Source: Schmidtea polychroa (taxonomy: Eukaryota). Taken from it: a stretch of DNA of 64,000 nt. Below are positions 44,740 through 63,799 of the stretch, piece by piece. The notes beneath the pieces are model-generated. The model was not told the origin of the DNA. It saw only the letters and a list, made by a program, of their open reading frames with translations, and ran no database searches. Where the stretch lies: NCBI GenBank assembly GCA_044892525.1, contig CM097886.1:73904001-73968000 (forward strand), in the 5' to 3' direction. The stretch's first letter is position 1; every line of letters begins with the position of its first letter. A program made the position numbers and the translations under genes.

Positions 44740-46395
44740 CTTCTTGATGAATATCACACACAAACTATAAGTCATTTCTTCAGACTTTTTACATCAAAAT
44801 GTGATTTTACTAAACAGATAAATATAGACTCTTTAAAATATGTCACTGGGTCTCGACTTGATAAAACTGACCCTACACTTCAGGAAAGCTTTAATTGGAT
44901 TAATGGTGCTGAACAGATTCGACATCACTCTGGCACAAAAACTCGTTTTCGTCGACCACGAACAGCCATACAGTTTTTTCAAAGAACACATAATATTACA
45001 ATATCTTTTGAAGTGTTGGATGATGAACCTGTTCTTCGCTTTACAACAATTTCGAATGGAACATTCATGTTGACTAGCAAAGATAGAAGTATGATCTCGA
45101 AAGTTTTTCACCTTGCTCTCTATGATTCGTATTTCACTAAATGGAAAAATAGTAACATAAGTGGATCTCTAGCATTTTCTCTGTCACCTAATATTAACAA
45201 AGCAATTTTTAAAGGAGAATTAAGTGAAGCTCCATGGAAATTCATTCATCGAGCTAGAACTAATACATTGGCCAATTTTGCAAAACCTTACAGACAACTT
45301 GAGAATCAAACGTGTAGACGATGTCATGATGAACCGGAAACTTTGCCACATGTTTTGCAAACTTGTAAGGTCCATCAAACTCTTGCACTTAATCGTCACA
45401 ACGATTGCCTCCAACAGATAGTTCACCATTTGAAAGACCCTTCACTCATTGTTGTTGTAGATCACATTTGTTCCTTGGTACCAAATTCTAAAGAACGTGT
45501 TGACTTGATTATAACAAACAATAGTAAAAAGACAATTTATATGGTTGACATCAAATGTCCGTTTGATTCGCTAGTGACATTTGATAATGTAAATAATAAA
45601 AATTTAGCAAAATATGATTCTTTGAAAAAGGAAATACAAGCTGTAAAACCTAATTTCACTGTGGAACTTCATACTTGTATTATTGGTTCCATTGGATCAG
45701 TTCCCCCAGTAACGTATGATCTGCTTAAAAAAATAGGTGTTTCGGATGGTAAAATACATGGATTATTGAAAGCATGTGCATTAAATAATATAACGCACTC
45801 TGCTAAAATATGGCATTTTCATGCGACTGGCATGCTTCCAGATCATTAAATAAATATTAATTAAATTTTGCTATCATTATCGGAATTGTTTGAATTGTGA
45901 GTTGTTGTTTTCTTTTTCAATGGTCTTATCATGATTACTTTGATAATTATAAACATTTCACAAGTCTGTCCATCAGAACAGCAAATCTTCCTATTATTCT
46001 AGTGAAATAAAGACAAATGAATTTAACTCCTGCCTGATGATTGATAGCTGCAGTGACATTCTGAGGAACTCAAAACCAAGAAATCATGAAAGCTGTCTAG
46101 ATTCAAAGAATGACTTCAATTATAATGTCAACAGTCAAAATATTCAAATCTGTTTTTTCAACTCAGTCCCTCCAAGAAAGTTGAAATTGCAATGCCGGCA
46201 CAGATGACCGATGAAAATCAGAATAGCCAGAGAAAATTCAATGAGTGAAATAATATTGAGACAAATATTTCCCAAAAATGATATATTAGTTGAAAAATTG
46301 TCTCTCTGGCGAAGAAACTCATGAATGGCGGATTCCAAGCAGAATCATCTCATTATCAAAATATAAAAAAACTTGTTATAATAATAAATGTTTAA
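44740..46395 (+). mobile_element. 5'-truncated copy of the RLE retrotransposon (end of RT region, CCHC finger, RLE, 3' UTR)
   Basis: Near-identical to the element from cttcttgatgaatatc onward, with the same 3' junction tttaa|ACTCAAG. Confidence 0.92.
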
Positions 46396-46467
46396 ACTCA
46401 AGTGCTAACTTACGCTGGGTGTTCTGGTCTCCGAATGGAGGCGTGGGTTCAAATCCCACTTCTGACA
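46396..46467 (+). pseudogene. 3' part of tRNA-Leu(CAA), interrupted by the element
   Basis: ACTCAAG-intron-TTCTGG...CTGACA is identical to 62995-63066; the 5' 31 nt are absent. Confidence 0.95.
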
Positions 46468-46611
46468 TATTTTTTTTCATTGTCATTTTACAAATAATGT
46501 TCTTGTTTTCTCATAGAATTGGTGTTTGAGTTTTTGAAAAAACTCTAAATCAAATGTTTCCATGTTTAGATAATTGACATTTTTTAAAGATAAAATCAAA
46601 AACATCAAAAA

Positions 46612-46682
46612 TGCATCGGCCGGGAATCGAACCCGGGTCGCCCGCGTGGCAGGCGAGCATTCTACCACTGAACCACCGATGC
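46612..46682 (-). tRNA. tRNA-Gly(GCC)
   Basis: Reverse complement GCATCGGTGGTTCAGTGGTAGAATGCTCGCCTGCCACGCGGGCGACCCGGGTTCGATTCCCGGCCGATGCA. Confidence 0.97.
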
Positions 46683-46916
46683 TACGAGAATAAGGTCATT
46701 TTGCATTTCTACTAATTCAACAATTCAAATTCAATATCGAAAGGATAGGGCATTTGCAATTATCAAATCAAATTCAAAAATAACAAAATAAAAACAATCT
46801 CCCTTTTTTGATTTAGGAAATTTTATTATGAAAGTCTAACAAAAATTGTCAACAACTTTTCCAGATTTAATTTTAAATAACAAAAGTGGAGAGATTGTCA
46901 ATGACAAGGAAAAATT

Positions 46917-46988
46917 AGGTCCCACCGAGATTTGAACTCGGGTCGCTGGATTCAGAGTCCAGAGTGCTAACCGCTACACCATGGGACC
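46917..46988 (-). tRNA. tRNA-Gln(CTG)
   Basis: Reverse complement GGTCCCATGGTGTAGCGGTTAGCACTCTGGACTCTGAATCCAGCGACCCGAGTTCAAATCTCGGTGGGACCT, followed by a T5 terminator. Confidence 0.97.
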
Positions 46989-47062
46989 ACATTTAGAGAT
47001 TATTTCCAAACAGGAATATCAAACAATCGAAAACTTGTCAACAACTTCAATCACACACCGAA

Positions 47063-49222
47063 ATGACGCAATCTAATCAACGTGAATTGCATAAGGAATT
47101 GCATAATGGAGAAATGAATCAGTTGGAATATTTTGCTCTTCTCCGAAATCAAATCCAATCAAATCAAACGTTGCTGGAATCAATCGTGGAACCATCTATG
47201 CTTTTTCCTTATGAAGATTTGTCAAGAAAATTTAGTCTGATGGAGAAGAATTTCAACTTGTTAAAATGTAAGATTGATTTGATTTTTGATAAGTTGAATG
47301 ATAATTCTTTTTTTGATGATTTTGGTAATGATTGTAAAATTAATTTAATTAATTCTCAAATTCAAACTGAATCAACAAATGATTTAACGCAGGTTATTAA
47401 GGAATCATTTGTTGATACAGTTATTAAAGATCCTAAACCTTTAAATAAAAAAACGTTTAAAAGTAATAATGTTAAAGATTCATTTAGGAAAGAAAATTTT
47501 AACTTTGATTCTTTTCCACGAATTTTGGAAAAGAGTCAAAGAAGAATTTTCATTAATAAATTTCCACATTTTAAAAAATTATTAAAATTAAAAAACTCAA
47601 AATATAAGGATGATACCATTAATAATGAGATTTCCTTAATTAATAAATCGGATTTGGGTTTTAAAATTGGCGATAAGGACAAATTCTTTTATCGAAATGG
47701 CAATTTTTGCATTTCGATAAAATTAAATAAGAATGATAAAGTTAAGGTTGATGTTCAGGGCGATAGGAATAAGAAATCACAAATAATAAATAAAACTTTG
47801 ATTTCTAATATTATTAATTTTAATCTTAGTAATTCAAAATTGATTTCTGCTCCTTTAGCGATAAGAAAGTTTTTATTTGCTCTTTCTACAAAACTTTCTG
47901 ATACTGTTAATATTAAAAACGAAATTCATAAGGGTTCCGTTATTAATAAAGCTCTTAATAGTTTAAAATCAGAAAATCAGCTACCAGACTTTCTTGTGAA
48001 ATCCGATTTAAGATATATTGATGGTGACTTTTTTATGAGGGATCTTCTTACTTTAGGAAATGTCGACAATGATTCTTTAAGCATAGGATCATCAATTTTG
48101 ACAAGGAAACAAGTAGAAAGACTTTATATAGATTTCCCAGAAATTAGGGAAATGTTTTTTGTTGAAAACATTTCTAAAAATCCTGATAAATTAATTAATT
48201 TAATAAATTACTTAAAGTTAAATAAAGAATTTCCTAATGATATTTCTTTTTCTGAAGGTAAATTTATTAGTGCTCATAAATCTAAGAAAATTGAACCTGA
48301 CTTGAACACTGCTTCTGACATAATGTTTAATCTTGGGTTATTCGATTTAATTGAAGTATCTAAAAACGATATTGAATTTGATAGAATTTTATCACTACCT
48401 GTATCTTCGACTAAAATTGTAGAAATAATTTTCCATCTCAACTATTTGAAGTTGAAGGATGATATTAAATATTCTAGTAACATAAGTTATGGTAATTATG
48501 TTTTAAACTATTTCCGTAATGTTTTACTCCTTCATTCTATAATTGATCGTGCACAGTGCAACTCGTTGACAATTGATTCTCTTGAAATATGGGCTTCTGA
48601 ATTAATTGATAAAATTCCTTCTAATTCTTATTTTAAAATTAGTTGTCAAGAGAAGTTAATAAAATATAAAAAGTGGTTACTGACTGGTGAAATCGATAAG
48701 TTAAAAAATATAATTTCACCCGATACAATTAAAAGAATAAATATATTTCTAAATTTATTTAATAAATCATTTATCGAAAAAGTGGACCGGTTGAATAATA
48801 TAAACTCGTTACTTGCTCACATCAATGATTTTCGTTATGAAAATAGTGATAATATTACAATTAAAGCTAAAAGATTATTATATTTCGTGATTAGAGATAA
48901 GAAAAAGTTTCTAATTAAAAATAGAAATGACTTTCAGATACCAATGAAATGTCGAAAACTCTGTAGTATAGAAATGAGCTTGGTTATCTTTGATCTTATC
49001 GATTCTCTTGAAACTCTGATAGCTTGCAAAGAACCATCTAACTCTGTCAAATCCACTGATAACTTTGATATCTCTAATAAAGAAAAAAAATCGACTGTCG
49101 AAACTATCATTTTACCAACTGATATTGATGAGGATGCATCAGGTTTGGAATCCAAAATTACAGATAGTAAAAAGATGATGACTAGAAATAATCTAAAATT
49201 GTCAAATGCCACATCCAAGTGA
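47063..49222 (+). CDS. Retrotransposon ORF1, 719 aa, unknown function (copy A)
   Basis: ATG 19 nt inside the element. Likely N-terminal coiled coil; no recognisable zinc finger or Myb motif. Ends in a TGA that is in frame with ORF2. Confidence 0.85.
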   Translation: MTQSNQRELHKELHNGEMNQLEYFALLRNQIQSNQTLLESIVEPSMLFPYEDLSRKFSLMEKNFNLLKCKIDLIFDKLNDNSFFDDFGNDCKINLINSQIQTESTNDLTQVIKESFVDTVIKDPKPLNKKTFKSNNVKDSFRKENFNFDSFPRILEKSQRRIFINKFPHFKKLLKLKNSKYKDDTINNEISLINKSDLGFKIGDKDKFFYRNGNFCISIKLNKNDKVKVDVQGDRNKKSQIINKTLISNIINFNLSNSKLISAPLAIRKFLFALSTKLSDTVNIKNEIHKGSVINKALNSLKSENQLPDFLVKSDLRYIDGDFFMRDLLTLGNVDNDSLSIGSSILTRKQVERLYIDFPEIREMFFVENISKNPDKLINLINYLKLNKEFPNDISFSEGKFISAHKSKKIEPDLNTASDIMFNLGLFDLIEVSKNDIEFDRILSLPVSSTKIVEIIFHLNYLKLKDDIKYSSNISYGNYVLNYFRNVLLLHSIIDRAQCNSLTIDSLEIWASELIDKIPSNSYFKISCQEKLIKYKKWLLTGEIDKLKNIISPDTIKRINIFLNLFNKSFIEKVDRLNNINSLLAHINDFRYENSDNITIKAKRLLYFVIRDKKKFLIKNRNDFQIPMKCRKLCSIEMSLVIFDLIDSLETLIACKEPSNSVKSTDNFDISNKEKKSTVETIILPTDIDEDASGLESKITDSKKMMTRNNLKLSNATSK

Positions 49223-52200
49223 AGGTATGTGCCTGTATCAGCCTCAACGTCTACTGCATTGTCTGATGAGACTGATGCAGAATGCACTCTTGACACTTGT
49301 AATTTAAAAAGCTGGTTTACTGATGACGAGATTGACTATTATTTTGAAAGTCACATAAGTAACCGAAAGTTCGCGTTCATTAAATGCTACATTGTGAGTA
49401 TTTTATGCTCAAATATTTCAGAAGATATTGTTTCGATTCCCGAAAATGTTTTCGATGCTCGAATGATCTTGTGTCCTCTGAATATAAATAATTGTCATTG
49501 GATATTATTTGTTTACTGTAAAACGTCTTGTAGCTCTTACTATATTGACTCAATATTTAAAAATACAAAGAAGTTTGCAAATAAACAAAGTGTTTTTAAA
49601 ATTAATTATGTATTAAATAACAAATTTAATCTTAATAATAAAATAGTAGATAACCCTCATAAAGATTTGGAATATCAAAATAATGATTTTGATTGTGGTC
49701 CTTTCATATGCGCTTATGCAATGATAGTTTGTAAAGAATGGGACATTTTTCCTACTAATTTTATTTTTAATATTAGGAAAGAAATTCGTACATTTCAATC
49801 TAGCCAATTGATTTATAACACTAAAGTTTCAGGGGGTGGAATTTCAAAAAATCATTTTCTAAATGGAATTAATTTTAAAAAAGCAATTGCTTTAAAAAAG
49901 AATCATCCAAATAATAATATTGTAAAACCAATAAAACTTACCAATGTAAAAGCTTGTGTGTCGACCTTATTGAAAATGTGGTTTGAATCTAATTCAAGGA
50001 TCATGGTTCTTTCTCCAGAATTGACAATGAATCTGATTACTCAAAATAATGTCTATATTATAGAAAATGTTTCTTTTAAACAATTTAAGGATATTGACTT
50101 GATTATCGGTATTATTCCAAATGAAAATTATTGGTGCCTTTTCCTTTGTTCAATTAGACTTGGTTTCAGCTACATTTTTGACGTTCGATCTGAAACTATC
50201 AATGATAGACTGATGGGAATTGGAGAAAATATCACAGATTACTTGAATAAATTTATGCTAGATAAGAATATTAAACTTCAACGAAATCATAGTCTTTTCC
50301 GATTTTCATTCTTTTCCGATGATCCAATAGTTCATGCTTCATCTTTCTTATTGTTTCTGGAAGAATATAATTCTGGAAATATATTGAATAGAGAAAAAGT
50401 AGTTGAAAGACTTGAAACGATGCAATCTAAAATAAATAATAAAGTTGCAATAAATTTAAATTTAATAAATTGTAAAGTTTCTGATGATATTTTAACAAAT
50501 TATTTCAATAATTTAAATTTATCTGAAAATTTCATATTTTTAAATAGTACAATGTGCATTGCAATAATAGACAATTGCACTCAATATTTAAATGACTTTT
50601 TAAATACTGATCAACTTATGAAAGCGCAAATTGTATTTGCAATTATTGCCCCACCAAAATCTCAGCAAATCTTGTTTGTCATCGACTACAACACTGATGA
50701 ACATTATTTACTTAATCCTTCAACTTTAGAGTTAAATATTCCCTACTTATTCCCTGCGAATGATTTATTAAATAAAATCAATGAAATTAGAGAAACTCCT
50801 GGTCTTTGCAGTAAAGCTGGAAACTGTCCTCATGATGTACGTGGTTCTGGTCTTGTTAGTAGAGTTCTCATCTGTGCCTTTATGAAACATTACGCTTTAG
50901 ATTTATCTCTTGAAAACATAAATTTACATGATATTGGAGGTGTGATTAATTCTTTATTGCCAACTGTAAAAGAAATTGAACAGTGTCCTAGTAAGACGGT
51001 GCCTGCTGATAAAGAAATTGTGAAGATGAAAATTAAAGAGCGCATTTTGTGGATAAATAAACATTTGATTACATTACGAAATGCAAGTGTTGATAAGATA
51101 AGTGATTTTATTAAGGATAATATTGTAAATAATAAAGTATCAAGTTCGAATAAGATTAGAAGACCATATTTAGGGAATAAATTCAATAAAAATGTACAAA
51201 ATAAAATAAAATTACGTACATCATTTAATACCCACATGAAAATGACTGTAAATAAAATTTTAATTAATGACGAAATAAATGATCGACCAACCATTAGAGA
51301 TCATATTGTCCATTTTAGTCATCGTGATCCGATTATAAGAAATTATGATAATATTTTAAAATATGGTGTACAATCTTTTAATATTCTAACGGTTGAACCT
51401 ATCGATGAGGATGAAGTGTTGTCTGAATTAAAAAGAGCTGATAACACATCTCCTGGACTTGATGGAATTAAATATAACGATATTGCAATTCTTGATCCAC
51501 AAGGTAAATTGTTGACACTTCTCTTTAATAAAATCCTGATCGATAATACTGTTCCTGATGTTTGGAAATCATTTAAAACATTAATGATTCCAAAACCTGA
51601 CAAGAGTGATAAATATAGTTTAATATCTTCTTGGCGACCTATTGCATTATTGTCGGTAGTTTATAAATTATTTGCGTCAATTTTAGCTAGGCGTCTTACA
51701 TCGTGGGTAAAATTGAATAATCTTCTTCACGTTGGACAAAAAGGGGGTTCTGTACACGATGGATGTGTTGAACACAATTCTATACTTTCATCTTGTCTTG
51801 AACATTCCAAATATAGTAAAGATATGCCAATCGCTATTGCATTTCTTGACATTAAGGACGCTTTTGGCAGTGTACCCCATGACTACATGTGGTGTATTTT
51901 GCGACATATTGGAGTTGGTGAAGATTTCACAAATATTTTGAAGCTTTTGTATACAGAAACAAGTTCTTTCTATACTTGTGGACCTATTGAAACACCGAAC
52001 ATTGCGATTAAACAGGGTGTTAAACAAGGGTGCCCTCTTTCAATGATTTTGTTTGCAATAGCAATCAATCCTGTTCTTCAAGCTGTTAGTCTTTCAAATA
52101 TAGATTCTTTTAAAATTCGTGAATCTTCAATTCAAGTTCTTGCATATGCTGATGATATAGCTCTTATTGCCAATAATGCTACTGACTTACAAAAGATAAT

Positions 52201-53782: not shown

Positions 53783-54328
53783 ATAAATATTAATTAAATT
53801 TTGCTATCATTATCGGAATTGTTTGAATTGTGAGTTGTTGTTTTCTTTTTCAATGGTCTTATCATGATTACTTTGATAATTATAAACATTTCACAAGTCT
53901 GTCCATCAGAACAGCAAATCTTCCTATTATTCTAGTGAAATAAAGACAATTGAATTTAAATCCTGCCTGATGATTGATAGCTGCAGTGACATTCTGAGGA
54001 ACTCAAAACCAAGAAATCATGAAAGCTGTCTAGATTCAAAGAATGACTTCAATTATAATGTCAACAGTCAAAATATTCAAATCTGTTTTTTCAACTCAGT
54101 CCCTCCAAGAAAGTTGAAATTGCAATGCCGGCACAGATGACCGATGAAAATCAGAATAGCCAGAGAAAATTCAATGAGTGAAACAATATTGAGACAAATA
54201 TTTCCCAAAAATGATATATTAGTTGAAAAATTGTCTCTCTGGCGAAGAAACTCATGAATGGCGGATTCCAAGCAGAATCATCTCATTATCAAAATATAAA
54301 AAAACTTGTTATAATAATAAATGTTTAA

Positions 54329-54544: not shown

Positions 54545-54615
54545 TGCATCGGCCGGGAATCGAACCCGGGTCGCCCGCGTGGCAGGCGAGCATTCTACCA
54601 CTGAACCACCGATGC
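54545..54615 (-). tRNA. tRNA-Gly(GCC)
   Basis: Identical to 46612-46682. Confidence 0.97.
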
Positions 54616-54849
54616 TACGAGAATAAAGTCATTTTGCATTTCTACTAATTCAACAATTCAAATTCAATATCGAAAGGATAGGGCATTTGCAATTATCAAA
54701 TCAAATTCAAAAATAACAAAATAAAAACAATCTCCCTTTTTTGATTTAGGAAATTTTATTATGAAAGTCTAACAAAAATTGTCAACAACTTTTCCAGATT
54801 TAATTTTAAATAACAAAAGTGGAGAGATTGTCAATGACAAGGAAAAATT

Positions 54850-54921
54850 AGGTCCCACCGAGATTTGAACTCGGGTCGCTGGATTCAGAGTCCAGAGTGC
54901 TAACCGCTACACCATGGGACC
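54850..54921 (-). tRNA. tRNA-Gln(CTG)
   Basis: Identical to 46917-46988. Confidence 0.97.
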
Positions 54922-54995
54922 ACATTTAGAGATTATTTCCAAACAGGAATATCAAACAATCGAAAACTTGTCAACAACTTCAATCACACACCGAA

Positions 54996-57155
54996 ATGAC
55001 GCAATCTAATCAACGTGAATTGCATAAGGAATTGCATAATGGAGAAATGAATCAGTTGGAATATTTTTCTCTTCTCCGAAATCAAATCCAATCAAATCAA
55101 ACGTTGCTGGAATCAATCGTGGAACCATCTATGCTTTTACATTATGAAGATTTGTCAAGAAAATTTAGTCTGATGGAGAAGAATTTCAACTTGTTAAAAT
55201 GTAAGATTGATTTGATTTTTGATAAGTTAAATGATAGTTCTTTTTTTGATGATTTTGGTAATGATTGTAAAATTAATTTAATTAATTCTCAAATTCAAAC
55301 TGAATCAACAAATGATTTAACGCAGGTTATTAAGGAATCATTTGTTGATACAGTTATTAACGATCCTAAACATTTAAATAAAAAAAAGTTTAAAACTATT
55401 AATGTTAAAGAATCATTTAGGAAAGAAAATTTTAACTTTGATTCTTTTCCACAAATTTTGGAAAAGAGTCAAAGAAGAATTTTCATTAATAAATTTCCAC
55501 ATTTTAAAAATTTATTAAAATTAAAAAACTCAAAATATAAGGATGATACTATTAATAATGAAATTTCCTTAATTAATAAATCGGATTTGGGTTTTAAAAT
55601 TGGCGATAAGGACAAATTCTTTTATCGAAATGGCAATTTTTGCATTTCGATAAAATTAAATAAGAATGATAAAGTTAAGGTTGATGTTCAGGGCGATAGG
55701 AATAAGAAATCACAAATAATAAATAAAACTTTGATTTCTAATATTATTAATTTTAATCTTAGTAATTCAAAATTGATTTCTCCTCCTTTAGCGATAAGAA
55801 AGTTTTTATTTGCTCTTTCTACAAAACTTTCTGATACTGTTAATATTAAAAACGAAATTCATAAGGGTTCTGTTATTAATAAAGCTCTTAATAGTTTAAA
55901 ATCAGAAAATCAGCTACCAGACTTTCTTGTGAAATCCGATTTAAGATATATTGATGGTGACTTTTTTATGAGGGATCTTCTTACTTTAGGAAATGTCGAT
56001 AATGATTCTTTAAGCATAGGATCATCAATTTTGACAAGGAAACAAGTAGAAAGACTTTATATAGATTTCCCAGAAATTAGGGAAATGTTTTTTGTTGAAA
56101 ACATTTCTAAAAATCCTGATAAATTAATTAATTTAATAAATTACTTAAAGTTAAATAAAGAATTTCCTAATGATATTTCTTTTTCTGAAGGTAAATTTAT
56201 TAGTGCTCATAAATCTAAGAAAATAGAACCTGACTTGAACAATGCTTCTGACATAATGTTTAATCTTGGGTTATTCGATTTAATTGAAGTATCTAAAAAC
56301 GATATTGAATTTGATAGAATTTTATCACTACCTGTATCTTCGACTAAAATTGTAGAAATAATTTTCCATCTCAACTATTTGAAGTTGAAGGATGATATTA
56401 AATATTCTAGTAACATAACTTATGGTAATTATGTTTTAAACTATTTCCGTAATGTTTTACTCCTTCATTCTATAATTGATCGTGCACAGTGCAACTCGTT
56501 GACAATTGATTCTCTTGAAATATGGGCTTCTGAATTAATTGATAAAATTCCTTCTAATTCTTATTTTAAAATTAGTTGTCAAGAGAAGTTAATAAAATAT
56601 AAAAAGTGGTTACTGACTGGTGAAATCGATAAGTTAAAAAATATAATTTCACCCGATACAATTAAAAGAATAAATATATTTCTAAATTTATTTAATAAAT
56701 CATTTATCGAAAAAGTTGACCGGTTGAATAATATAAACTCGTTACTTGCTCACATCAATGATTTTCGTTCTGAAAATAGTGATAATATTACAATTAAAGC
56801 TAGAAGATTATTATATTTCGTAATTAGAGATAAGAAAAAGTTTCTAATTAAAAATAGAAATGACTTCCAGATACCAATGAAATGTCGAAAACTCTGTAGT
56901 ATAGAAATGAGCTTGGTTATCTTTGATCTTATCGATTCTCTTGAAACTCTGATAGCTTGCAAAGAACCATCTAACTCTGTCGAATCCACTGATAACTTTG
57001 ATATCTCTAATAAAGAAAAAATTTCGACTGTCGAAACTATCATTTTACCAACTGATATTGATGAGGATGCATCATGTTTGGAATCCAAAATTACAGATAG
57101 TAAAAAGATGATGACTAGAAATAATCTAAAATTGTCAAAGGCCACATCCAAGTGA
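54996..57155 (+). CDS. Retrotransposon ORF1 (copy B), 719 aa
   Basis: Homologous to 47063-49222. Confidence 0.85.
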   Translation: MTQSNQRELHKELHNGEMNQLEYFSLLRNQIQSNQTLLESIVEPSMLLHYEDLSRKFSLMEKNFNLLKCKIDLIFDKLNDSSFFDDFGNDCKINLINSQIQTESTNDLTQVIKESFVDTVINDPKHLNKKKFKTINVKESFRKENFNFDSFPQILEKSQRRIFINKFPHFKNLLKLKNSKYKDDTINNEISLINKSDLGFKIGDKDKFFYRNGNFCISIKLNKNDKVKVDVQGDRNKKSQIINKTLISNIINFNLSNSKLISPPLAIRKFLFALSTKLSDTVNIKNEIHKGSVINKALNSLKSENQLPDFLVKSDLRYIDGDFFMRDLLTLGNVDNDSLSIGSSILTRKQVERLYIDFPEIREMFFVENISKNPDKLINLINYLKLNKEFPNDISFSEGKFISAHKSKKIEPDLNNASDIMFNLGLFDLIEVSKNDIEFDRILSLPVSSTKIVEIIFHLNYLKLKDDIKYSSNITYGNYVLNYFRNVLLLHSIIDRAQCNSLTIDSLEIWASELIDKIPSNSYFKISCQEKLIKYKKWLLTGEIDKLKNIISPDTIKRINIFLNLFNKSFIEKVDRLNNINSLLAHINDFRSENSDNITIKARRLLYFVIRDKKKFLIKNRNDFQIPMKCRKLCSIEMSLVIFDLIDSLETLIACKEPSNSVESTDNFDISNKEKISTVETIILPTDIDEDASCLESKITDSKKMMTRNNLKLSKATSK

Positions 57156-60100
57156 AGGTATGTGCCTGTATCAGCCTCAACGTCTACTGCATTGTCTGAT
57201 GAGACTGATGCAGAATGCACTCTTGACACTTGTAATTTAAAAAGCTGGTTTACTGATGACGAGATTGACTATTATTTTGAAAGTCACATAAGTAACCGAA
57301 AATTCGCGTTCATTAAATGTTACATTGTGAGTATTTTATGCTCAAATATTTCAGAAGATATTGTTTCGATTCCCGAAAATGTTTTCGATGCTCGAATGAT
57401 CTTGTGTCCTCTGAATATAAATAATTGTCATTGGATATTATTTGTTTACTGTAAAACGTCTTGTAGCTCTTACTATATTGACCCAATATTTAAAAATACA
57501 AAGAAGTTTGCAAATAAACAAAGTGTTTTTAAAATTAATTATGTATTAAATAACAAATTTAATCTTAATAATAAAATAGTAGATAACCCTCATAAAGATT
57601 TGGAATATCAAAATAATGATTTTGATTGTGGTCCTTTCATATGCGCTTATGCAATGATAGTTTGTAAAGAATGGGACATTTTTCCTACTAATTTTATTTT
57701 TAATATTAGGAAAGAAATTCGTACATTTCAATCTAGCCAATTGATTTATAACACTAAAGTTTCAGGGGGTGGAATTTCAAAAAATCATTTTCTAAATGGA
57801 ATTAATTTTAAAAAAGCAATTGCTTTAAAAAAGAATCATCCAAATAATAATATTGTAAAACCAATAAAACTTACCAATGTAAAAGCTTGTGTGTCGACCT
57901 TATTGAAAATGTGGTTTGAATCTAATTCAAGGATCATGGTTCTTTCTCCAGAGTTGACAATGAATCTGATTACTCAAAATAATGTCTATATTATAGAAAA
58001 TGTTTCTTTTAAACAATTTAAGGATATTGACTTGATTATCGGTATCATTCCAAATGAAAATTATTGGTGCCTTTTCCTTTGTTCAATTAGACTTGGTTTC
58101 AGCTACATTTTTGACGTTCGATCTGAAACTATCAATGATAGACTGATGGGAATTGGAGAAAATATCACAGATTACTTGAATAAATTTATGCTAGATAAGA
58201 ATATTAAACTTCAACGAAATCATAGTCTTTTCCGATTTTCATTCTTTTCCGATGATCCAATAGTTCATGCTTCATCTTTCTTATTGTTTTTGGAAGAATA
58301 TAATTCTGGAAATATATTGAATAGAGAAAAAGTAGTTGAAAGACTTGAAACGATGCAATCTAAAATAAATAATAAAGTTGCAATAAATTTAAATTTAATA
58401 AATTGTAAAGTTTCTGATGATATTTTAACAAATTATTTCAATAATTTAAATTTATCTGAAAATTTCATATTTTTAAATAGTACAATGTGCATTGCAATAT
58501 TAGACAATTGCACTCAATATTTAAATGACTTTTTAAATACTGATCAACTTATGAAAGCGCAAATTGTATTTGCAATTATTGCCCCACCAAAATCTCAGCA
58601 AATCTTGTTTGTCATCGACTACAACACTGATGAACATTATTTACTTAATCCTTCAACTTTAGAGTTAAATATTCCCTACTTATTTCCTGCGAATGATTTA
58701 TTAAATAAAATCAATGAAATTAGAGAAACTCCTGGTCTTTGCAGTAAAGCTGGAAACTGTCCTCATGATGTACGTGGTTCTGGTCTTGTTAGTAGAGTTC
58801 TCATCTGTGCCTTTATGAAACATTACGCTTTAGATTTATCTCTTGAAAACATAAATTTACATGATATTGGAGGTGTGATTAATTCTTTATTGCCAACTGT
58901 AAAAGAAATTGAACAGTGTCCGGTTAAGACGGTGCCTGCTGATAAAGAAATTGTGAAGATGAAAATTAAAGAGCGCATTTTGTGGATAAATAAACATTTG
59001 ATTACATTACGAAATGCAAGTGTTGATAAGATAAGTGATTTTATTAAGGATAATATTGTAAATAATAAAGTATCTAGTTCGAATAAGCTTAGAAGACCAT
59101 ATTTAGGGAATAAATTCAATAAAAATGTACAAAATAAAATAAAATTACGTACATCATTTAATACTCACATGAAAATGACTGTAAATAAAATTTTAATTAA
59201 TGACGAAATAAATGATCGACCAACCATTAGAGATCATATTGTCCATTTTAGTCATCGTGATCCGATTATAAGAAATTATGATAATATTTTAAAATATGGT
59301 GTACAATCTTTTAATATTCTAGCGGTTGAACCTATCGATGAAGATGAAGTGTTGTCTGAATTAAAAAGAGCTGATAACACATCTCCTGGACTTGATGGAA
59401 TTAAATATAATGATATTGCAATTCTTGATCCACAAGGTAAATTGTTGACACTTCTCTTTAATAAAATCCTGACCGATAATACTGTTCCTGATGTTTGGAA
59501 ATCATTTAAAACATTAATGATTCCAAAACCTGACAAGAGTGATAAATATAGTTTAATATCTTCTTGGCGACCTATTGCATTATTGTCGGTAGTTTACAAA
59601 TTATTTGCGTCAATTTTAGCTAGGCGTCTTACATCGTGGGTAAAATTGAATAATCTTCTTCACGTTGGACAAAAAGGGGGTTCTGTACACGATGGATGTG
59701 TTGAACACAATTCTATACTTTCATCTTGTCTTGAACATTCCAAATATAGTAAAGATTTGCCAATTGCTATTGCATTTCTTGACATTAAGGACGCTTTTGG
59801 CAGTGTACCCCATGACTACATGTGGTGTATTTTGCGACATATTGGAGTTGGTGAAGATTTCACAAATATTTTGAAGCTTTTGTATACAGAAACAAGTTCT
59901 TTCTATACTTGTGGACCTATTGAAACACCGAACATTGCGATTAAACAGGGTGTTAAACAAGGGTGCCCTCTTTCAATGATTTTGTTTGCAATAGCAATCA
60001 ATCCTGTTCTTCAAGCTGTTAGTCTTTCAAATATAGATTCTTTTAAAATTCGTGAATCTTCAATTCAAGTTCTTGCATATGCTGATGATATAGCTCTTAT

Positions 60101-61715
60101 TGCCAATAATGTTACTGACTTACAAAAGATAATAAACATTGCTTTCAATACTGCTTCAGAAATAGGCTTTGAATATCGACCAGAAAAGTGTGCGTACATC
60201 GAACTACCAAATAGTGTAAACCTTAGTGAAATAACAATTGATAACATTAACATCAAAAAATTACTAATCAAAGAGTTCTATCAATATCTTGGGGTACCGG
60301 TTGGTGAAGAACATGACCAGAGTCCTTATGAAATTCTTGATCAGGTAGTCAGTGATGCGAAAAGACTTGCTGATTCAGACTTGTACGGTTGGCAAAAGCT
60401 GAAAGCTTACAAAATATTTCTTCACTCTCGTCTAATTTTCCCATTTAGAACTAGAGAAATTAAAGTTAGTGCTCTTTCTGCAAATAGTGGTAACAGTACA
60501 ACAAAACTTCGCAGTCACTTGAGAAAGATGATGAATTTGTCTGGTCATTCTGAAATCAGTTACTTTTACAATTCTATTGAAAATGGAGGCGCATCTTGTA
60601 CTGATCTTCTTGATGAATATCACACACAAACTATAAGTCATTTCTTCAGACTTTTTACATCAAAATGTGATTTTACTAAACAGATAAATATAGACTCTTT
60701 AAAATATGTCACTGGGTCTCGACTTGATAAAACTGACCCTACACTTCAGGAAAGCTTTAATTGGATTAATGGTGCTGAACAGATTCGACATCACTCTGGC
60801 ACAAAAACTCGTTTTCGTCGACCACGAACAGCCATACAGTTTTTTCAAAGAACACATAATATTACAATATCTTTTGAAGTGTTGGATGATGAACCTGTTC
60901 TTCGCTTTACAACAATTTCGAATGGAACATTCATGTTGACTAGCAAAGAGAGAAGTATGATCTCGAAAGTTTTTCACCTTGCTCTCTATGATTCGTATTT
61001 CACTAAATGGAAAAATAGTAACATAAGTGGATCTCTAGCATTTTCTCTGTCACCTAATATTAACAAAGCAATTTTTAAAGGAGAAATAAGTGAAGCTGCA
61101 TGGAAATTCATTCATCGAGCTAGAACTAATACATTGGCCAATTTCGCAAAACCTTACAGACAACTTGAGAATCAAACGTGTAGACGATGTCATGATGAAC
61201 CGGAAACTTTGCCACATGTTTTGCAAACTTGTAAGGTCCATCAAACTCTTGCACTTAATCGTCACAACGATTGCCTTCAACATTTAGTTCACCATTTGAA
61301 AGACCCTTCACTCATTGTTGTTGTAGATCACATTTGTTCCTTGGTACCAAATTCTAAAGAACGTGTTGACTTGATTATAACAAACAATAGTAAAAAGACA
61401 ATTTATATGGTTGACATCAAATGTCCGTTTGATTCGCTAGTGACATTTGATAATGTAAATAATAAAAATCTAGCAAAATATGATTCTTTGAAAAAGGAAA
61501 TACAAGTTGTAAAACCTAATTTCACTGTGGAACTTCATACTTGTATTATTGGTTCCATTGGATCAGTTCCCCCAGTGACGTATGATCTGCTTAATAAAAT
61601 AGGTGTTTCGAATGGTAAAATACATGGCTTATTGAAAGCATGTGCATTAAATAATATAACGCACTCTGCTAAAATATGGCATTTTCATGCGACTGGCATG
61701 CTTCCAGATCATTAA
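57156..61715 (+). CDS. Retrotransposon ORF2 protease-RT-RLE (copy B)
   Basis: Homologous to copy A; open from the codon after the TGA at 57153-57155. Confidence 0.95.
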   Translation, partial: RYVPVSASTSTALSDETDAECTLDTCNLKSWFTDDEIDYYFESHISNRKFAFIKCYIVSILCSNISEDIVSIPENVFDARMILCPLNINNCHWILFVYCKTSCSSYYIDPIFKNTKKFANKQSVFKINYVLNNKFNLNNKIVDNPHKDLEYQNNDFDCGPFICAYAMIVCKEWDIFPTNFIFNIRKEIRTFQSSQLIYNTKVSGGGISKNHFLNGINFKKAIALKKNHPNNNIVKPIKLTNVKACVSTLLKMWFESNSRIMVLSPELTMNLITQNNVYIIENVSFKQFKDIDLIIGIIPNENYWCLFLCSIRLGFSYIFDVRSETINDRLMGIGENITDYLNKFMLDKNIKLQRNHSLFRFSFFSDDPIVHASSFLLFLEEYNSGNILNREKVVERLETMQSKINNKVAINLNLINCKVSDDILTNYFNNLNLSENFIFLNSTMCIAILDNCTQYLNDFLNTDQLMKAQIVFAIIAPPKSQQILFVIDYNTDEHYLLNPSTLELNIPYLFPANDLLNKINEIRETPGLCSKAGNCPHDVRGSGLVSRVLICAFMKHYALDLSLENINLHDIGGVINSLLPTVKEIEQCPVKTVPADKEIVKMKIKERILWINKHLITLRNASVDKISDFIKDNIVNNKVSSSNKLRRPYLGNKFNKNVQNKIKLRTSFNTHMKMTVNKILINDEINDRPTIRDHIVHFSHRDPIIRNYDNILKYGVQSFNILAVEPIDEDEVLSELKRADNTSPGLDGIKYNDIAILDPQGKLLTLLFNKILTDNTVPDVWKSFKTLMIPKPDKSDKYSLISSWRPIALLSVVYKLFASILARRLTSWVKLNNLLHVGQKGGSVHDGCVEHNSILSSCLEHSKYSKDLPIAIAFLDIKDAFGSVPHDYMWCILRHIGVGEDFTNILKLLYTETSSFYTCGPIETPNIAIKQGVKQGCPLSMILFAIAINPVLQAVSLSNIDSFKIRESSIQVLAYADDIALIANNVTDLQKIINIAFNTASEIGFEYRPEKCAYIELPNSVNLSEITIDNINIKKLLIKEFYQYLGVPVGEEHDQSPYEILDQVVSDAKRLADSDLYGWQKLKAYKIFLHSRLIFPFRTREIKVSALSANSGNSTTKLRSHLRKMMNLSGHSEISYFYNSIENGGASCTDLLDEYHTQTISHFFRLFTSKCDFTKQINIDSLKYVTGSRLDKTDPTLQESFNWINGAEQIRHHSGTKTRFRRPRTAIQFFQRTHNITISFEVLDDEPVLRFTTISNGTFMLTSKERSMISKVFHLALYDSYFTKWKNSNISGSLAFSLSPNINKAIFKGEISEAAWKFIHRARTNTLANFAKPYRQLENQTCRRCHDEPETLPHVLQTCKVHQTLALNRHNDCLQHLVHHLKDPSLIVVVDHICSLVPNSKERVDLIITNNSKKTIYMVDIKCPFDSLVTFDNVNNKNLAKYDSLKKEIQVVKPNFTVELHTCIIGSIGSVPPVTYDLLNKIGVSNGKIHGLLKACALNNITHSAKIWHFHATGMLPDH

Positions 61716-62262
61716 ATAAAATATTAATTAAATTTTGCTATCATTATCGGAATTGTTTGAATTGTGAATTGTTGTTTTCTTTTTCAATGGTCTTATCATG
61801 ATTACTTTGATAATTATAAACATTTCACAAGTCTGTCCATCAGAACAGCAAATCTTCCTATATTTCTAGTGAAATAAAGACAAATGAAACAATCTCCTGC
61901 CTGATGACTGATAGCTGTAGTGACATTCTGAGGAACTCAAAACCAAGAAATCATGAAAGCTGTCTAGATTCAAAGAATGATTTCAATTATAATGTCTACA
62001 GTCAAAATATTCAAATCTGTTTTTTCAACTAAGTCCCTCCAAGAAAGTTGAAATTGCAATGCCGGCACAGATGACCGATGAAAATCAGAATAGCCAGAGA
62101 AAATTCAATGAGCGAAACAAAATTGAGACAAATATTTCCCAAAAATAATATATTAGTTGAAAAATTGTCTCTCTGGCGAAGAAACTCATGAATGGCGGAT
62201 TCCAAGCAGAATCATCTCATTATCAAAATATAAAAAAACTTGTTATAATAATAAATGTTTAA

Positions 62263-62334
62263 ACTCAAGTGCTAACTTACGCTGGGTGTTCTGGTCTCCG
62301 AATGGAGGCGTGGGTTCAAATCCCACTTCTGACA
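62263..62334 (+). pseudogene. 3' part of tRNA-Leu(CAA), interrupted
   Basis: Same junction tttaa|ACTCAAG. Confidence 0.95.
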
Positions 62335-62478
62335 TATTTTTTTTCATTGTCATTTTACAAATAATGTTCTTGTTTTCTCATAGAATTGGTGTTTGAGTTT
62401 TTGAAAAAACTCTAAATCAAATGTTTCCATGTTTAGATAATTGACATTTTTTAAAAATAAAATCAAAAACATCAAACA

Positions 62479-62548
62479 TGCATCGCCGGGAATCGAACCC
62501 GGGTCGCCCGCGTGGCAGGCGAGCATTCTACCACTGAACCACCGATGC
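62479..62548 (-). tRNA. tRNA-Gly(GCC) variant with a 1-nt deletion (70 nt)
   Basis: Plus strand reads tgcatcgccggg versus tgcatcggccggg in other copies; either a defective copy or a sequencing error. Confidence 0.75.
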
Positions 62549-62782
62549 TACGAGAATAAAGTCATTTTGCATTTCTACTAATTCAACAATTCAAATTCAA
62601 TATCGAAAGGATAGGGCATTTGCAATTATCAAATCAAATTCAAAAATAACAAAATAAAAACAATCTCCCTTTTTTGATTTAGGAAATTTTATTATGAAAG
62701 TCTAACAAAAATTGTCAACAACTTTTCCAGATTTAATTTTAAATAACAAAAGTGGAGAGATTGTCATTGACAAGGAAAAATT

Positions 62783-62854
62783 AGGTCCCACCGAGATTTG
62801 AACTCGGGTCGCTGGATTCAGAGTCCAGAGTGCTAACCGCTACACCATGGGACC
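62783..62854 (-). tRNA. tRNA-Gln(CTG)
   Basis: Identical to other copies. Confidence 0.97.
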
Positions 62855-62963
62855 ACATTTAGAGATTATTTCCAAACAGGAATATCAAACAATCGAAAAC
62901 TTGTCAACATTTCCTTTATTTGTTGCGTCGAATTTGATTTGCAGATATTTTCCAGAATAAATT

Positions 62964-63066
62964 GTCAGGATGGCCGAGTGGTCTAAGGCGCCAGACTCAA
63001 GTGCTAACTTACGCTGGGTGTTCTGGTCTCCGAATGGAGGCGTGGGTTCAAATCCCACTTCTGACA
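62964..63066 (+). tRNA. tRNA-Leu(CAA), intact, with 19-nt intron (63002-63020)
   Basis: GTCAGGATGGCCGAGTGGTCTAAGGCGCCAGACTCAAG[TGCTAACTTACGCTGGGTG]TTCTGGTCTCCGAATGGAGGCGTGGGTTCAAATCCCACTTCTGACA, followed by a T-run terminator. Confidence 0.97.
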
Positions 63067-63210
63067 TATTTTTTTTCATTGTCATTTTACAAATAATGTT
63101 CTTGTTTTCTCATAGAATTGGTGTTTGAGTTTTTGAAAAAACTCTAAATCAAATGTTTCCATGTTTAGATAATTGACATTTTTTAAAAATAAAATCAAAA
63201 ACATCAAACA

Positions 63211-63281
63211 TGCATCGGCCGGGAATCGAACCCGGGTCGCCCGCGTGGCAGGCGAGCATTCTACCACTGAACCACCGATGC
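63211..63281 (-). tRNA. tRNA-Gly(GCC)
   Basis: Canonical 71-nt copy. Confidence 0.97.
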
Positions 63282-63515
63282 TACGAGAATAAAGTCATTT
63301 TGCATTTCTACTAATTCAACAATTCAAATTCAATATCGAAAGGATAGGGCATTTGCAATTATCAAATCAAATTCAAAAATAACAAAATAAAAACAATCTC
63401 CCTTTTTTGATTTAGGAAATTTTATTATGAAAGTCTAACAAAAATTGTCAACAACTTTTCCAGATTTAATTTTAAATAACAAAAGTGGAGAGATTGTCAA
63501 TGACAAGGAAAAATT

Positions 63516-63587
63516 AGGTCCCACCGAGATTTGAACTCGGGTCGCTGGATTCAGAGTCCAGAGTGCTAACCGCTACACCATGGGACC
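63516..63587 (-). tRNA. tRNA-Gln(CTG)
   Basis: Canonical 72-nt copy. Confidence 0.97.
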
Positions 63588-63696
63588 ACATTTAGAGATT
63601 ATTTCCAAACAGGAATATCAAACAATCGAAAACTTGTCAACATTTCCTTTATTTGTTGCGTCGAATTTGATTTGCAGATATTTTCCAGAATAAATT

Positions 63697-63799
63697 GTCA
63701 GGATGGCCGAGTGGTCTAAGGCGCCAGACTCAAGTGCTAACTTACGCTGGGTGTTCTGGTCTCCGAATGGAGGCGTGGGTTCAAATCCCACTTCTGACA
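63697..63799 (+). tRNA. tRNA-Leu(CAA), intact, with intron
   Basis: Identical to 62964-63066. Confidence 0.97.

What the first reader, a model, noticed from the sequence alone, without database searches (positions are those of the whole stretch)
44740..63799. RLE non-LTR retrotransposon inserting site-specifically in the anticodon arm of intron-containing tRNA-Leu(CAA) genes of a tandem array
Seen: three copies (3' ends at 46395, 54328, 62262) share the junction ...ataataaatgtttaa|ACTCAAGTGCTAAC. In intact units this position is CCAG|ACTCAAG, the anticodon stem-loop boundary (+/-1 nt) just before the anticodon and intron. Intact units of the same array follow at 62964 and 63697. Established: RLE elements (R2, R4, NeSL, Utopia) target multicopy RNA genes, and protease plus RT plus RLE is NeSL-group-like. 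Inference: this is a tRNA-Leu-specific family using a multicopy safe harbour, and its recognition site may include the tRNA intron. I recall tRNA-array-associated LIN families from planarians in Repbase, so novelty must be checked.
Basis: partly seen in the sequence, partly recalled or inferred. Interest (0 to 1): 0.85.

Follow-up and report, generated by a model that had tools for sequence, protein, structure and literature searches.

The report
Flatworm retrotransposon inserted in tRNA-Leu genes
A coding-intact jumping gene of a known kind (NeSL-like, with a restriction-like endonuclease) sits at exactly the same nucleotide of the anticodon stem in three neighbouring tRNA-Leu(CAA) genes of a flatworm tRNA array; relatives that target other tRNA genes are already described in planarians, so this adds a new target, not a new principle.

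Summary
Three copies end at 46395, 54328 and 62262 and are followed by the same tRNA-Leu(CAA) remainder. Intact intron-bearing genes lie at 62964 and 63697. The insertion point is between nucleotides 30 and 31, in the 5' strand of the anticodon stem.

Every occupied unit lacks 85 bp of target. The two full-length copies share one 5' junction. The whole region reads as a 7933-bp tandem repeat.

A single amplified insertion is therefore a serious rival. Two results argue for at least two separate retrotranspositions. Copies 2 and 3 differ at 85 alignment columns, with ORF2 dN/dS of 0.23. Their 3' UTRs differ by 3.3%, against 0.3% for the adjoining array DNA.

The element is 7285 bp. It has ORF1, an in-frame UGA followed by a conserved, covarying stem, and ORF2 with a Ulp1 protease, reverse transcriptase, CCHC motif and restriction-like endonuclease (RLE). 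The host is a flatworm, probably a planarian.

Kojima and Jurka (2015) already describe NeSL-clade planarian LIN families specific for tRNA-Arg and tRNA-Glu genes, and loss of the target's 5' part on insertion. My verdict is a new member of a known kind. Genome-wide specificity could not be tested.

The parts
43783..44713 (+). Three old, degenerate pieces of the element's 5' region (ORF1 start): 43783-43906, 43995-44211 and 44284-44713.
   Evidence: 77-91% identity to 47053-47608. One search counts frameshifting indels as 3, 2 and 4, and stops as 1, 0 and 2. The second piece is preceded by 19 nt (43979-43997) that match array spacer 62873-62891 at 18 of 19 positions. That is a 5' junction different from the young copies'.
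44740..46395 (+). Copy 1: 5'-truncated, the last 1656 bp of the element. It holds the C-terminal part of ORF2 with no stop in what remains, plus the 3' UTR.
   Evidence: It differs from copy 2 at 4 of 1656 positions.
46396..47043 (.). Occupied array unit 1 (648 bp). It holds the 3' remainder of tRNA-Leu (46396-46467, + strand), tRNA-Gly (46612-46682, - strand) and tRNA-Gln (46917-46988, - strand).
47044..54328 (+). Copy 2: full length, 7285 bp, both ORFs open.
47063..49222 (+). ORF1, 719 aa, ending in UGA. No known domain.
   Evidence: One search finds 16 relatives among 1.84 billion representatives. Searches give a model with no fold match.
49229..49287 (+). Stem of 16 base pairs that starts 6 nt after the UGA. 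Candidate signal for stop-codon readthrough.
   Evidence: In 7 lineages, 92.5% of cells are paired and 6 pairs show compensatory changes. None of 500 shuffles reaches this. Slid controls give 20-39% paired.
49229..53782 (+). ORF2, 1517 aa, in the same frame as ORF1. Ulp1 protease at 49439-49729, reverse transcriptase at 51587-52363, CCHC motif at 53246-53299, RLE core at about 53429-53488.
   Evidence: Peptidase_C48 4.7e-7, RVT_1 1.1e-29. R2 proteins 2e-51, Ulp1 3e-4. CCHC motif; the CCHC and RLE region matches R2 at 1.8e-5; invariant C, H, D and K columns. Ulp1/SENP fold.
53783..54328 (+). 3' UTR. It ends in a motif shared with relatives, with AATAAA 13 nt before the last base. There is no poly(A) run.
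54329..54976 (.). Occupied array unit 2 (648 bp), identical to the matching part of an intact unit.
54977..62262 (+). Copy 3: full length, 7286 bp. ORF1 is 54996-57155 and ORF2 is 57162-61715, both open.
62263..62909 (.). Occupied array unit 3.
62910..62994 (+). The 85 bp present in intact units and missing from every occupied unit: 54 bp of upstream spacer plus tRNA-Leu nucleotides 1-31.
   Evidence: read directly.
62964..63066 (+). Intact tRNA-Leu(CAA) gene with intron. This is the empty target site.
63697..63799 (+). Second intact tRNA-Leu(CAA) gene.

Best explanation
This is a young, coding-intact non-LTR retrotransposon of the NeSL/Utopia/LIN kind in a flatworm genome. It inserts by target-primed reverse transcription at one fixed nucleotide of tRNA-Leu(CAA) genes in a Leu-Gly-Gln tandem array.

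Shown:
- The element has a 7285-bp body and three identical 3' junctions between anticodon-stem nucleotides 30 and 31.
- 85 bp of target are lost at the 5' side.
- ORF1 and ORF2 are open in both full-length copies.
- ORF2 has Ulp1-like protease, reverse transcriptase, CCHC and restriction-like endonuclease (RLE) domains.
- An in-frame UGA followed by a covarying stem is conserved in relatives that share 35-51% of ORF2 residues.

Inferred:
- The endonuclease nicks the bottom strand opposite G30|A31, and that end primes copying from the RNA's defined 3' end.
- The top strand is cut, or the cDNA is joined, 85 bp upstream. This removes the gene's 5' half with its A box and kills that tRNA copy.
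- ORF2 is made as an ORF1-ORF2 fusion by UGA readthrough and may be cut by its own protease.
- At least two of the three copies are separate insertion events (copy 3 versus copies 1 and 2). Copies 1 and 2 may be a block duplication or two insertions from one source.
- A multicopy array tolerates the loss of units, so it serves as a safe harbour.
For: - Junctions.
- Domains.
- Independent events, selection: copies 2 and 3 differ at 85 of 7286 alignment columns. In ORF2, 19 differences are synonymous and 17 are not, giving dN/dS of 0.23. A binomial test gives p = 2e-5. A simulation with transitions and transversions at 1:1 expects 8.6 synonymous, P = 3e-4.
- Independent events, flank: the 3' UTR differs at 18 of 546 positions, the adjoining 648-bp array flank at 2 (Fisher p = 4.5e-5).
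- Unit length: 733 - 85 + 7285 = 7933. Precise insertions into neighbouring units predict exactly this period.
- Earlier event: an older remnant carries a different 5' junction with the same array spacer.
- 3' end: the last ~30 nt align with relative L001 up to the junction and diverge after it.
- Relatives next to other small RNA genes: a 7SL RNA 3' end before L003 (60.5 bits) and a U2-like flank after L088 (E = 0.13, weak).
- Literature: NeSL-clade elements specific for tRNA-Pro, tRNA-Arg and tRNA-Glu genes, and loss of the 5' part of the U2 gene when Utopia inserts (PMC4640811). Target deletions accompany all described NeSL elements (PMC3636483).
- Readthrough signal.
Against: - All three copies lie in one array, as one 7933-bp repeat with one shared 5' junction. 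This is the signature of unequal crossover.
- Copies 1 and 2 and their flanks are about equally diverged (0.2-0.5%), as a block duplication predicts.
- Concerted evolution of the array could have homogenised the flanks up to the element boundary. That would explain the contrast between UTR and flank without independent insertions.
- No copy elsewhere in this genome could be examined. The protein collections hold nothing closer than 59% identity.
- The older remnants show that 5' junctions can vary, so the identity of the two young junctions is not self-evidently mechanistic.
- The 5' UTR is only 19 nt and no promoter was identified.
- No N-terminal zinc finger or Myb motif was found that could read the target.
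Confidence: 0.72

Rival explanations
1. One insertion, amplified. A single element landed once in one tRNA-Leu gene, perhaps by chance. The composite 7933-bp unit was then multiplied by unequal crossover within the array. On this reading the three identical junctions say nothing about target choice.
For: - The period is constant at 7933/7934 bp.
- The two full-length copies share the same 5' junction and the same 85-bp loss.
- Copies 1 and 2 are nearly identical, with 4 differences in 1656 bp, and their flanks differ by a similar amount, 3 in 648.
- Older remnants show that 5' junctions of this element can differ between events.
Against: - Differences that arise in place should be neutral. Yet ORF2 of copies 2 and 3 shows dN/dS of 0.23 (P = 3e-4 by simulation), and both ORFs stay open in both copies.
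- The 3' UTR is about 11 times more diverged than the flank that touches it.
- Relatives of this element lie beside other small RNA genes.
- The clade is known to be target-specific (PMC4640811).
Confidence: 0.2
2. Regional preference, not a nucleotide-specific site. The element is drawn to Pol III-transcribed genes or to this array in general, as Dictyostelium TRE elements or yeast Ty3 are. The shared junction then reflects descent plus local recombination.
For: - Relatives sit near a 7SL gene and a U2-like sequence.
- No recognisable sequence-reading zinc finger or Myb domain was found.
Against: - The 3' junction is identical to the nucleotide in copies that differ by 1.2% overall.
- RLE elements of this clade are sequence-specific where they have been studied (PMC4640811).
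- TRE and Ty3 insert beside tRNA genes, not inside them (own knowledge).
Confidence: 0.05
3. Assembly artefact. A long-read assembler laid allelic or collapsed versions of one occupied unit side by side.
For: - The repeats are near-identical.
- A second, unrelated 6843-bp tandem repeat at 99.9% identity lies next door.
Against: - Copy 3 differs from copy 2 at 85 alignment columns, in a pattern of purifying selection. Allelic divergence in place would not give that pattern.
- Junctions with intact units at 62909/62910 and with the old remnants at 44739/44740 read through cleanly.
Confidence: 0.03

Closest known systems
Planarian LIN families of the R5/LIN lineage, NeSL clade (LIN15_SM in tRNA-Arg genes, LIN25_SM in tRNA-Glu genes, LIN9/24/26_SM in 28S rDNA; Kojima and Jurka 2015, PMC4640811)
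   Same: The host group is the same (flatworm). Both are RLE-bearing non-LTR elements that target multicopy tRNA genes. That paper states that target specificity has diversified in this lineage.
   Different: tRNA-Leu(CAA) is not among the listed targets. I could not compare sequences, because Repbase is not available here and supplement S6 is not held as text. This could therefore be an undescribed target or an already deposited LIN family.
Utopia (U2 snRNA gene-specific, NeSL clade; PMC4640811)
   Same: Both have reverse transcriptase, a CCHC motif and an RLE. Both have a precise 3' junction inside a small RNA gene. Both lose the 5' part of the target gene on insertion, which that paper explains by a top-strand cut upstream of the bottom-strand cut. 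The best named protein hits come from Utopia-bearing taxa (Pelodiscus, Phytophthora) at 25-30% identity.
   Different: Utopia encodes a single ORF with 1-3 N-terminal zinc fingers. Here there are two ORFs joined by a UGA, and no N-terminal zinc finger. The target is a tRNA gene, not U2. The uniform array here allows the deletion to be measured exactly, at 85 bp.
NeSL-1 of Caenorhabditis (spliced-leader genes) and Utopia-1_TSP
   Same: [quoted passage not shown] Both target a tandemly repeated small RNA gene, with a target-site deletion (PMC3636483).
   Different: The target differs. This element has an extra 719-aa ORF1 and possibly two further protease-like modules without catalytic signatures. 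The last point is inferred from the secondary structure of the model only.
NeSL-1_TV of Trichomonas (tRNA-Pro gene-specific; PMC4640811)
   Same: It is an RLE element specific for a tRNA gene.
   Different: The host is a protist and the tRNA is different. Its phylogenetic position is unresolved in that paper.
R2 (28S rDNA)
   Same: The enzymatic core is the same: the reverse transcriptase matches at 2e-51 and the CCHC plus RLE region at 1.8e-5 against solved R2 proteins. The logic is the same: a fixed site in a tandem multicopy RNA gene, with uniform junctions of full-length copies.
   Different: R2 has N-terminal zinc-finger and Myb domains, a single ORF, co-transcription with rRNA and a 5' ribozyme (own knowledge). 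Here the 5' UTR is 19 nt and the target is a Pol III gene.
Dada DNA transposons (Dada-tL in tRNA-Leu genes; PMC3706591, PMC8869645)
   Same: Both choose tRNA-Leu genes and the anticodon-stem region. This is a convergent choice of site.
   Different: Dada is a DNA transposon with 6-7 bp target duplications. It is unrelated in mechanism.

Membership tests
Non-LTR retrotransposon with restriction-like endonuclease (RLE; the R2/NeSL/R4/CRE/HERO group) | Reverse transcriptase of the non-LTR type | tested here: met
   Pfam RVT_1 at 1.1e-29. Solved R2 proteins match at 2e-51 and LINE-1 ORF2p at 5e-18.
Non-LTR retrotransposon with restriction-like endonuclease (RLE; the R2/NeSL/R4/CRE/HERO group) | C-terminal CCHC motif followed by a PD-(D/E)xK nuclease | tested here: met
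   CCHC at ORF2 residues 1340-1357. Invariant C1340, C1343, H1352, C1357, D1403, D1418 and K1420 across 10 lineages. The region aligns with R2 protein residues 933-1088 at 1.8e-5.
Non-LTR retrotransposon with restriction-like endonuclease (RLE; the R2/NeSL/R4/CRE/HERO group) | No terminal repeats, a defined 3' end, and 5'-truncated copies | tested here: met
   Self-comparison shows no repeat within the element. Copy 1 is 5'-truncated. The 3' end is identical in three copies.
NeSL clade in the sense of Kojima and Jurka 2015 (NeSL, Utopia, YURE, R5/LIN) | Reverse transcriptase groups with NeSL-1, R5 or Utopia in a phylogeny with reference families | not testable with these tools
   No Repbase references could be fetched. 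An indirect pointer is that the best named hits are from taxa listed as Utopia hosts, at 25-30% identity (PMC4640811).
NeSL clade in the sense of Kojima and Jurka 2015 (NeSL, Utopia, YURE, R5/LIN) | [quoted passage not shown] | tested here: met
   Peptidase_C48 at 4.7e-7, above Pfam's cut-off. Ulp1 1euv at 2.7e-4. Foldseek finds Ulp1, SENP and NEDP1 at 1e-5. Invariant H90, D107, Q150 and C156.
NeSL clade in the sense of Kojima and Jurka 2015 (NeSL, Utopia, YURE, R5/LIN) | One to three N-terminal zinc fingers and a single ORF | tested here: not met
   No C2H2 or C2HC pattern in ORF1 or in the N-terminal 780 residues of ORF2. No Pfam zinc-finger or Myb hit even at E = 10. There are two ORFs, separated by an in-frame UGA.
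NeSL clade in the sense of Kojima and Jurka 2015 (NeSL, Utopia, YURE, R5/LIN) | Insertion in a multicopy small RNA gene, with loss of target sequence | tested here: met
   Inserted in tRNA-Leu(CAA) with 85 bp missing.
Site-specific element (operational definition) | The same 3' junction in independently inserted copies | tested here: inconclusive
   There are three identical junctions. Independence of copy 3 from copies 1 and 2 is inferred from dN/dS of 0.23 and from the contrast between UTR and flank. All three lie in one array.
Site-specific element (operational definition) | No young copies at unrelated sites elsewhere in the genome | not testable with these tools
   Only this 64-kb window of the genome is available. 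No same-family protein is in the collections.
Programmed stop-codon readthrough signal | An in-frame stop conserved between ORFs, with a conserved downstream RNA structure at a short spacing | tested here: met
   UGA is present in all 7 lineages. The stem starts 6 nt after it, with 16 pairs, 6 of them with compensatory changes.
Programmed stop-codon readthrough signal | A fusion protein is made | not testable with these tools
   This needs expression data.

The most novel reading that the evidence does not exclude
This flatworm lineage may read its targets without the N-terminal zinc-finger or Myb modules of R2, NeSL and Utopia. It might use instead the lineage-restricted ORF1 protein or the protease-like modules. 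It may have switched repeatedly between small RNA genes: tRNA-Leu here, another tRNA-like flank in L001, a U2-like flank in L088, and a 7SL neighbour in L003. It would also be an RLE element that makes its ORF2 by programmed UGA readthrough. In that case the family would be a natural series of retargeted integrases with a new recognition module.
Probability: 0.2. Interest if true: 0.6.

Novelty: new member of a known kind. Interest (0 to 1): 0.36.

Why it matters
tRNA-gene-specific retrotransposons with a restriction-like endonuclease (RLE) are few: one for tRNA-Pro in Trichomonas, and ones for tRNA-Arg and tRNA-Glu in a planarian. A Leu(CAA) family with two open, full-length copies next to empty target sites adds to that short list.

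Because the array is uniform, it also gives an exact figure for the target loss: 85 bp, covering the whole 5' half of the gene. The Utopia study could not determine this figure.

The conserved UGA plus stem between ORF1 and ORF2, and the absence of known DNA-reading motifs, are leads on how this lineage is expressed and how it finds its site. Elements with fixed sites in dispensable multicopy genes are of interest as models of safe-harbour integration.

Tried and rejected
- Close relatives in public data. The protein search found nothing closer than 59% identity. A search with the last 300 residues, meant to catch short fragments from the same species, gave 3 hits and none from the same family. 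The metagenome scan gave only relatives of 36% identity or less over the best-matching segment. The viral-contig scan gave none.
- Flanks of relatives. ARAGORN found no tRNA in L001-L019. Rfam found only the 7SL piece in L003. It found nothing in L006, L087 and L088 as wholes, nor in L089, L090, L007 and L008. Two contigs had no DNA on hand.
- Fragment C. I read the sequence just before old fragment C as a tRNA T-arm. Rfam does not support this, so I dropped it.
- ORF1. There is no Pfam hit, no PDB sequence hit and no Foldseek hit (best E = 0.85) for a model of pLDDT 67.
- Three protease modules. The model of ORF2 residues 1-780 shows three modules with the same order of helices and strands. 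Modules 2 and 3 have no significant sequence similarity to module 1 or to each other. This stays a weak inference.
- Literature. Supplement S6 of PMC4640811, which shows the junctions of the tRNA-specific LIN families, is not held as searchable text. The NeSL-1 paper is not held. One search for readthrough in non-LTR elements found nothing relevant.
- Consensus lines. The alignment tools printed consensus lines by themselves.
- Slip. I put none of those letters into a tool call and count them as no evidence. The U2 reading was then tested with Rfam. The D-arm reading of L001's 10-nt flank remains an untested recollection.
Full report
**1. The observation**

The 29-nt string that spans the junction occurs three times in the window, at 46381, 54314 and 62248. 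None is expected by chance.

Rfam and ARAGORN find a repeated set of tRNA genes: Gly(GCC) and Gln(CTG) on the minus strand, and a 103-nt tRNA on the plus strand at 62964-63066 and 63697-63799. In the covariance-model alignment that gene has the anticodon CAA and about 19 extra nucleotides after it. The 5' strand of its anticodon stem is CCAGA.

The element ends right before the last A of that strand. The insertion point is therefore between nucleotides 30 and 31, one base pair before the anticodon loop. The array unit is 733 bp.

**2.

Comparing occupied and intact units gives the 5' boundary. Array sequence runs to 47043 and to 54976, which correspond to 62909 in an intact unit. The element begins at the next base.

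The next 85 bp of an intact unit (62910-62994) are absent from occupied units. They are 54 bp of spacer and the first 31 nt of the tRNA. Each insertion has thus removed the 5' half of the gene. The two full-length copies have identical 5' junctions.

A self-comparison shows that 44740-62909 is a 7933-bp tandem repeat, with 99.1% identity between neighbours and 98.5% between the first and third units. The arithmetic fits precise insertions: 733 - 85 + 7285 = 7933.

Copy 1 is only the last 1656 bp of the element. Upstream of it, at 43783-44713, lie three old pieces of the element's 5' region, 77-91% identical to the young copies. They carry 3, 2 and 4 frameshifting indels and 1, 0 and 2 stops. 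The second piece is preceded by 19 nt of array spacer, joined at a different point from the young copies. It therefore records a separate, older event in this array.

**3. One insertion amplified, or several insertions?**

I tested it with the sequences as they stand.

- Copies 2 and 3 differ at 85 of 7286 alignment columns (84 substitutions and one 1-nt indel): 1.44% in ORF1, 0.79% in ORF2 and 3.3% in the 3' UTR.
- In ORF2, 19 differences are synonymous and 17 are not. That gives dN/dS of 0.23 and a binomial p of 2e-5.
- A simulation that keeps the observed 1:1 ratio of transitions to transversions expects 8.6 synonymous changes. It reaches 19 in 3 of 10,000 runs.
- Both ORFs are open in both copies.

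Changes that arise after a duplication in place should be neutral. Most of this divergence therefore arose while the lineages were still being copied as working elements.

Second, the 3' UTRs of copies 2 and 3 differ at 18 of 546 positions. The 648 bp of array DNA that touch them differ at 2 (Fisher p = 4.5e-5).

Copies 1 and 2 differ at 4 of 1656 positions and their flanks at 3 of 648. That pair may be a block duplication.

My reading is at least two retrotranspositions into the same nucleotide, with possibly one duplication. Three caveats remain. Gene conversion from uninserted units could have cleaned the flanks. The shared 5' junction still needs an explanation. All copies lie in one array.

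**4. Anatomy**

- Copy 2 spans 47044-54328. It has a 19-nt leader and then ORF1 (47063-49222, 719 aa).
- A UGA follows, and then ORF2 in the same frame (49229-53782, 1517 aa).
- ORF2 has Peptidase_C48 (Ulp1) at residues 71-167 and RVT_1 at 787-1045.
- Its reverse transcriptase matches solved R2 proteins at 2e-51.
- Its C-terminal 300 residues match the CCHC and endonuclease region of R2 at 1.8e-5.
- The CCHC motif is at 1340-1357. The C, H, D and K residues of the nuclease are invariant in ten lineages.
- A model of residues 1-780 (pLDDT 70) matches Ulp1, SENP and NEDP1 proteases. It shows three modules with the same order of secondary-structure elements, but only the first has sequence support.
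- No C2H2, Myb or other DNA-reading motif was found ahead of the reverse transcriptase or in ORF1.
- ORF1 has 16 relatives among 1.84 billion representative proteins and no match in Pfam, PDB or by fold.
- The 546-nt 3' UTR ends without a poly(A) run. AATAAA lies 13 nt before the last base.

**5. A conserved signal at the ORF1-ORF2 boundary**

In the window and in six relatives that share 35-51% of ORF2 residues, ORF1 ends in UGA and ORF2 follows in the same frame.

Six nucleotides after the UGA a stem of 16 pairs begins (49229-49287). Of its cells, 92.5% are paired, and 6 pairs keep pairing through changes on both sides. None of 500 shuffles reaches this, and slid controls give 20-39% paired.

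A stop codon with a short spacer and a stable downstream stem is the known layout of programmed readthrough signals (own knowledge). That the fusion protein is made is an inference.

**6. Host and relatives**

The neighbouring gene (41343-42584) is a Tsr3-methyltransferase fusion. Its named relatives are all flatworms, at 35-43% identity. One unnamed protein is 85% identical. Together with the roughly 28% G+C of the window, this points to a free-living flatworm, probably a planarian.

The closest ORF2 relatives, at 39-59% identity, are on short contigs from sequencing runs and metagenomes.

- L001 (59%) shares the last ~30 nt of the 3' UTR up to the junction and then continues with a different, G+C-rich 10-nt flank before the contig ends.
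- L088 (40%) ends in the same terminal motif. About 30 nt follow, and their best Rfam match is U2 snRNA. The match is weak, at 14.9 bits and E = 0.13.
- L003 (44%) is preceded by the 3' end of a 7SL RNA gene (60.5 bits).

These are single copies with short flanks. They suggest, but do not prove, that the lineage lives in or beside small RNA genes and changes targets.

**7. Comparison with what is known**

Kojima and Jurka (PMC4640811) place NeSL, Utopia, YURE and the planarian R5/LIN families in one clade. They report NeSL-1_TV as tRNA-Pro gene-specific, LIN15_SM as tRNA-Arg gene-specific and LIN25_SM as tRNA-Glu gene-specific. They state that target specificity has diversified in the flatworm lineage.

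They also describe Ulp1-like proteases in nematode NeSL and Utopia-1_TSP. In Phytophthora they found that the 5' fragment of the U2 gene is lost on insertion. They explain this by a top-strand cut upstream of the bottom-strand cut, and they could not measure the deletion.

PMC3636483 notes that target deletions accompany all described NeSL elements. Dada DNA transposons independently target the anticodon-stem region of tRNA genes, including tRNA-Leu (PMC8869645).

The present element therefore works like a known kind. Its new points are:
- the Leu(CAA) target;
- the exactly measured 85-bp loss;
- the two-ORF layout with a readthrough-type signal;
- the lack of N-terminal zinc fingers.

Membership in the NeSL clade by RT phylogeny, and identity with a deposited LIN family, could not be tested here.

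**8. Mechanism, with its status**

Shown: the junctions, the target loss, the domains, the open frames, and the conserved UGA and stem.

Inferred:
- a bottom-strand nick opposite G30|A31 that primes copying from the RNA's defined 3' end;
- joining 85 bp upstream, either by a fixed top-strand cut, or because the transcript carries upstream spacer so that the junction is re-created by annealing at each new site;
- ORF2 made by readthrough and possibly processed by its protease;
- tolerance by the host because the array has spare units.

Whether the intron is part of the recognition site is untested.

**9. Verdict**

This is a new member of a known kind, of moderate interest.

Noticed in passing
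window 19883-42056: A second, unrelated tandem repeat with a 6843-bp period, 3.24 copies at 99.9% identity. Each unit holds a piece of a pogo-like DDE_1 transposase ORF (for example 38695-39381) and a copy of the 5' part of the neighbouring Tsr3-methyltransferase gene (34500-35222 repeats 41343 onward).
   Followed up: partly
window 41343-43411: A host gene that fuses Tsr3 (Ribo_biogen_C) with a methyltransferase domain. Among named hits this fusion is seen only in flatworms. The best hit, at 85%, is an unnamed protein.
   Followed up: partly
window 17999-19084: An open 361-aa ORF with CARD and caspase (Peptidase_C14) domains, probably a host gene.
   Followed up: no
L003 1-115: The 3' part of a metazoan 7SL (SRP) RNA gene, complete to its end, lies directly before a relative with 44% ORF2 identity. 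ORF1 of that relative starts at 312.
   Followed up: partly
L088 4147-4176: After the conserved terminal motif of a relative with 40% identity, the last ~30 nt of the contig give U2 snRNA as the best Rfam family (model positions about 20-47, E = 0.13). This is not the nucleotide-39 site reported for Utopia.
   Followed up: partly
L001 6996-7005: The closest relative (59%) has a different, G+C-rich 10-nt 3' flank. From memory it resembles a tRNA D-arm, but it is too short to test here.
   Followed up: no
window 62479-62548 and 63944-64000: The tRNA-Gly gene of occupied unit 3 has a 1-nt indel and scores 54 bits, against 66.6 for the others. The partial Gly gene at the window's end also carries several changes. 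Some array units are decaying.
   Followed up: no
window 54314-54328; L001 6983-6995; L088 4136-4146: AATAAA lies about 13 nt before the last base of the element in three lineages, yet the DNA copies carry no poly(A) run.
   Followed up: partly
window 44713-44740: Young copy 1 abuts an old remnant of 77-91% identity. It is unclear whether this is a deletion within a once full-length copy or a 5'-truncated insertion that was joined to the remnant.
   Followed up: no
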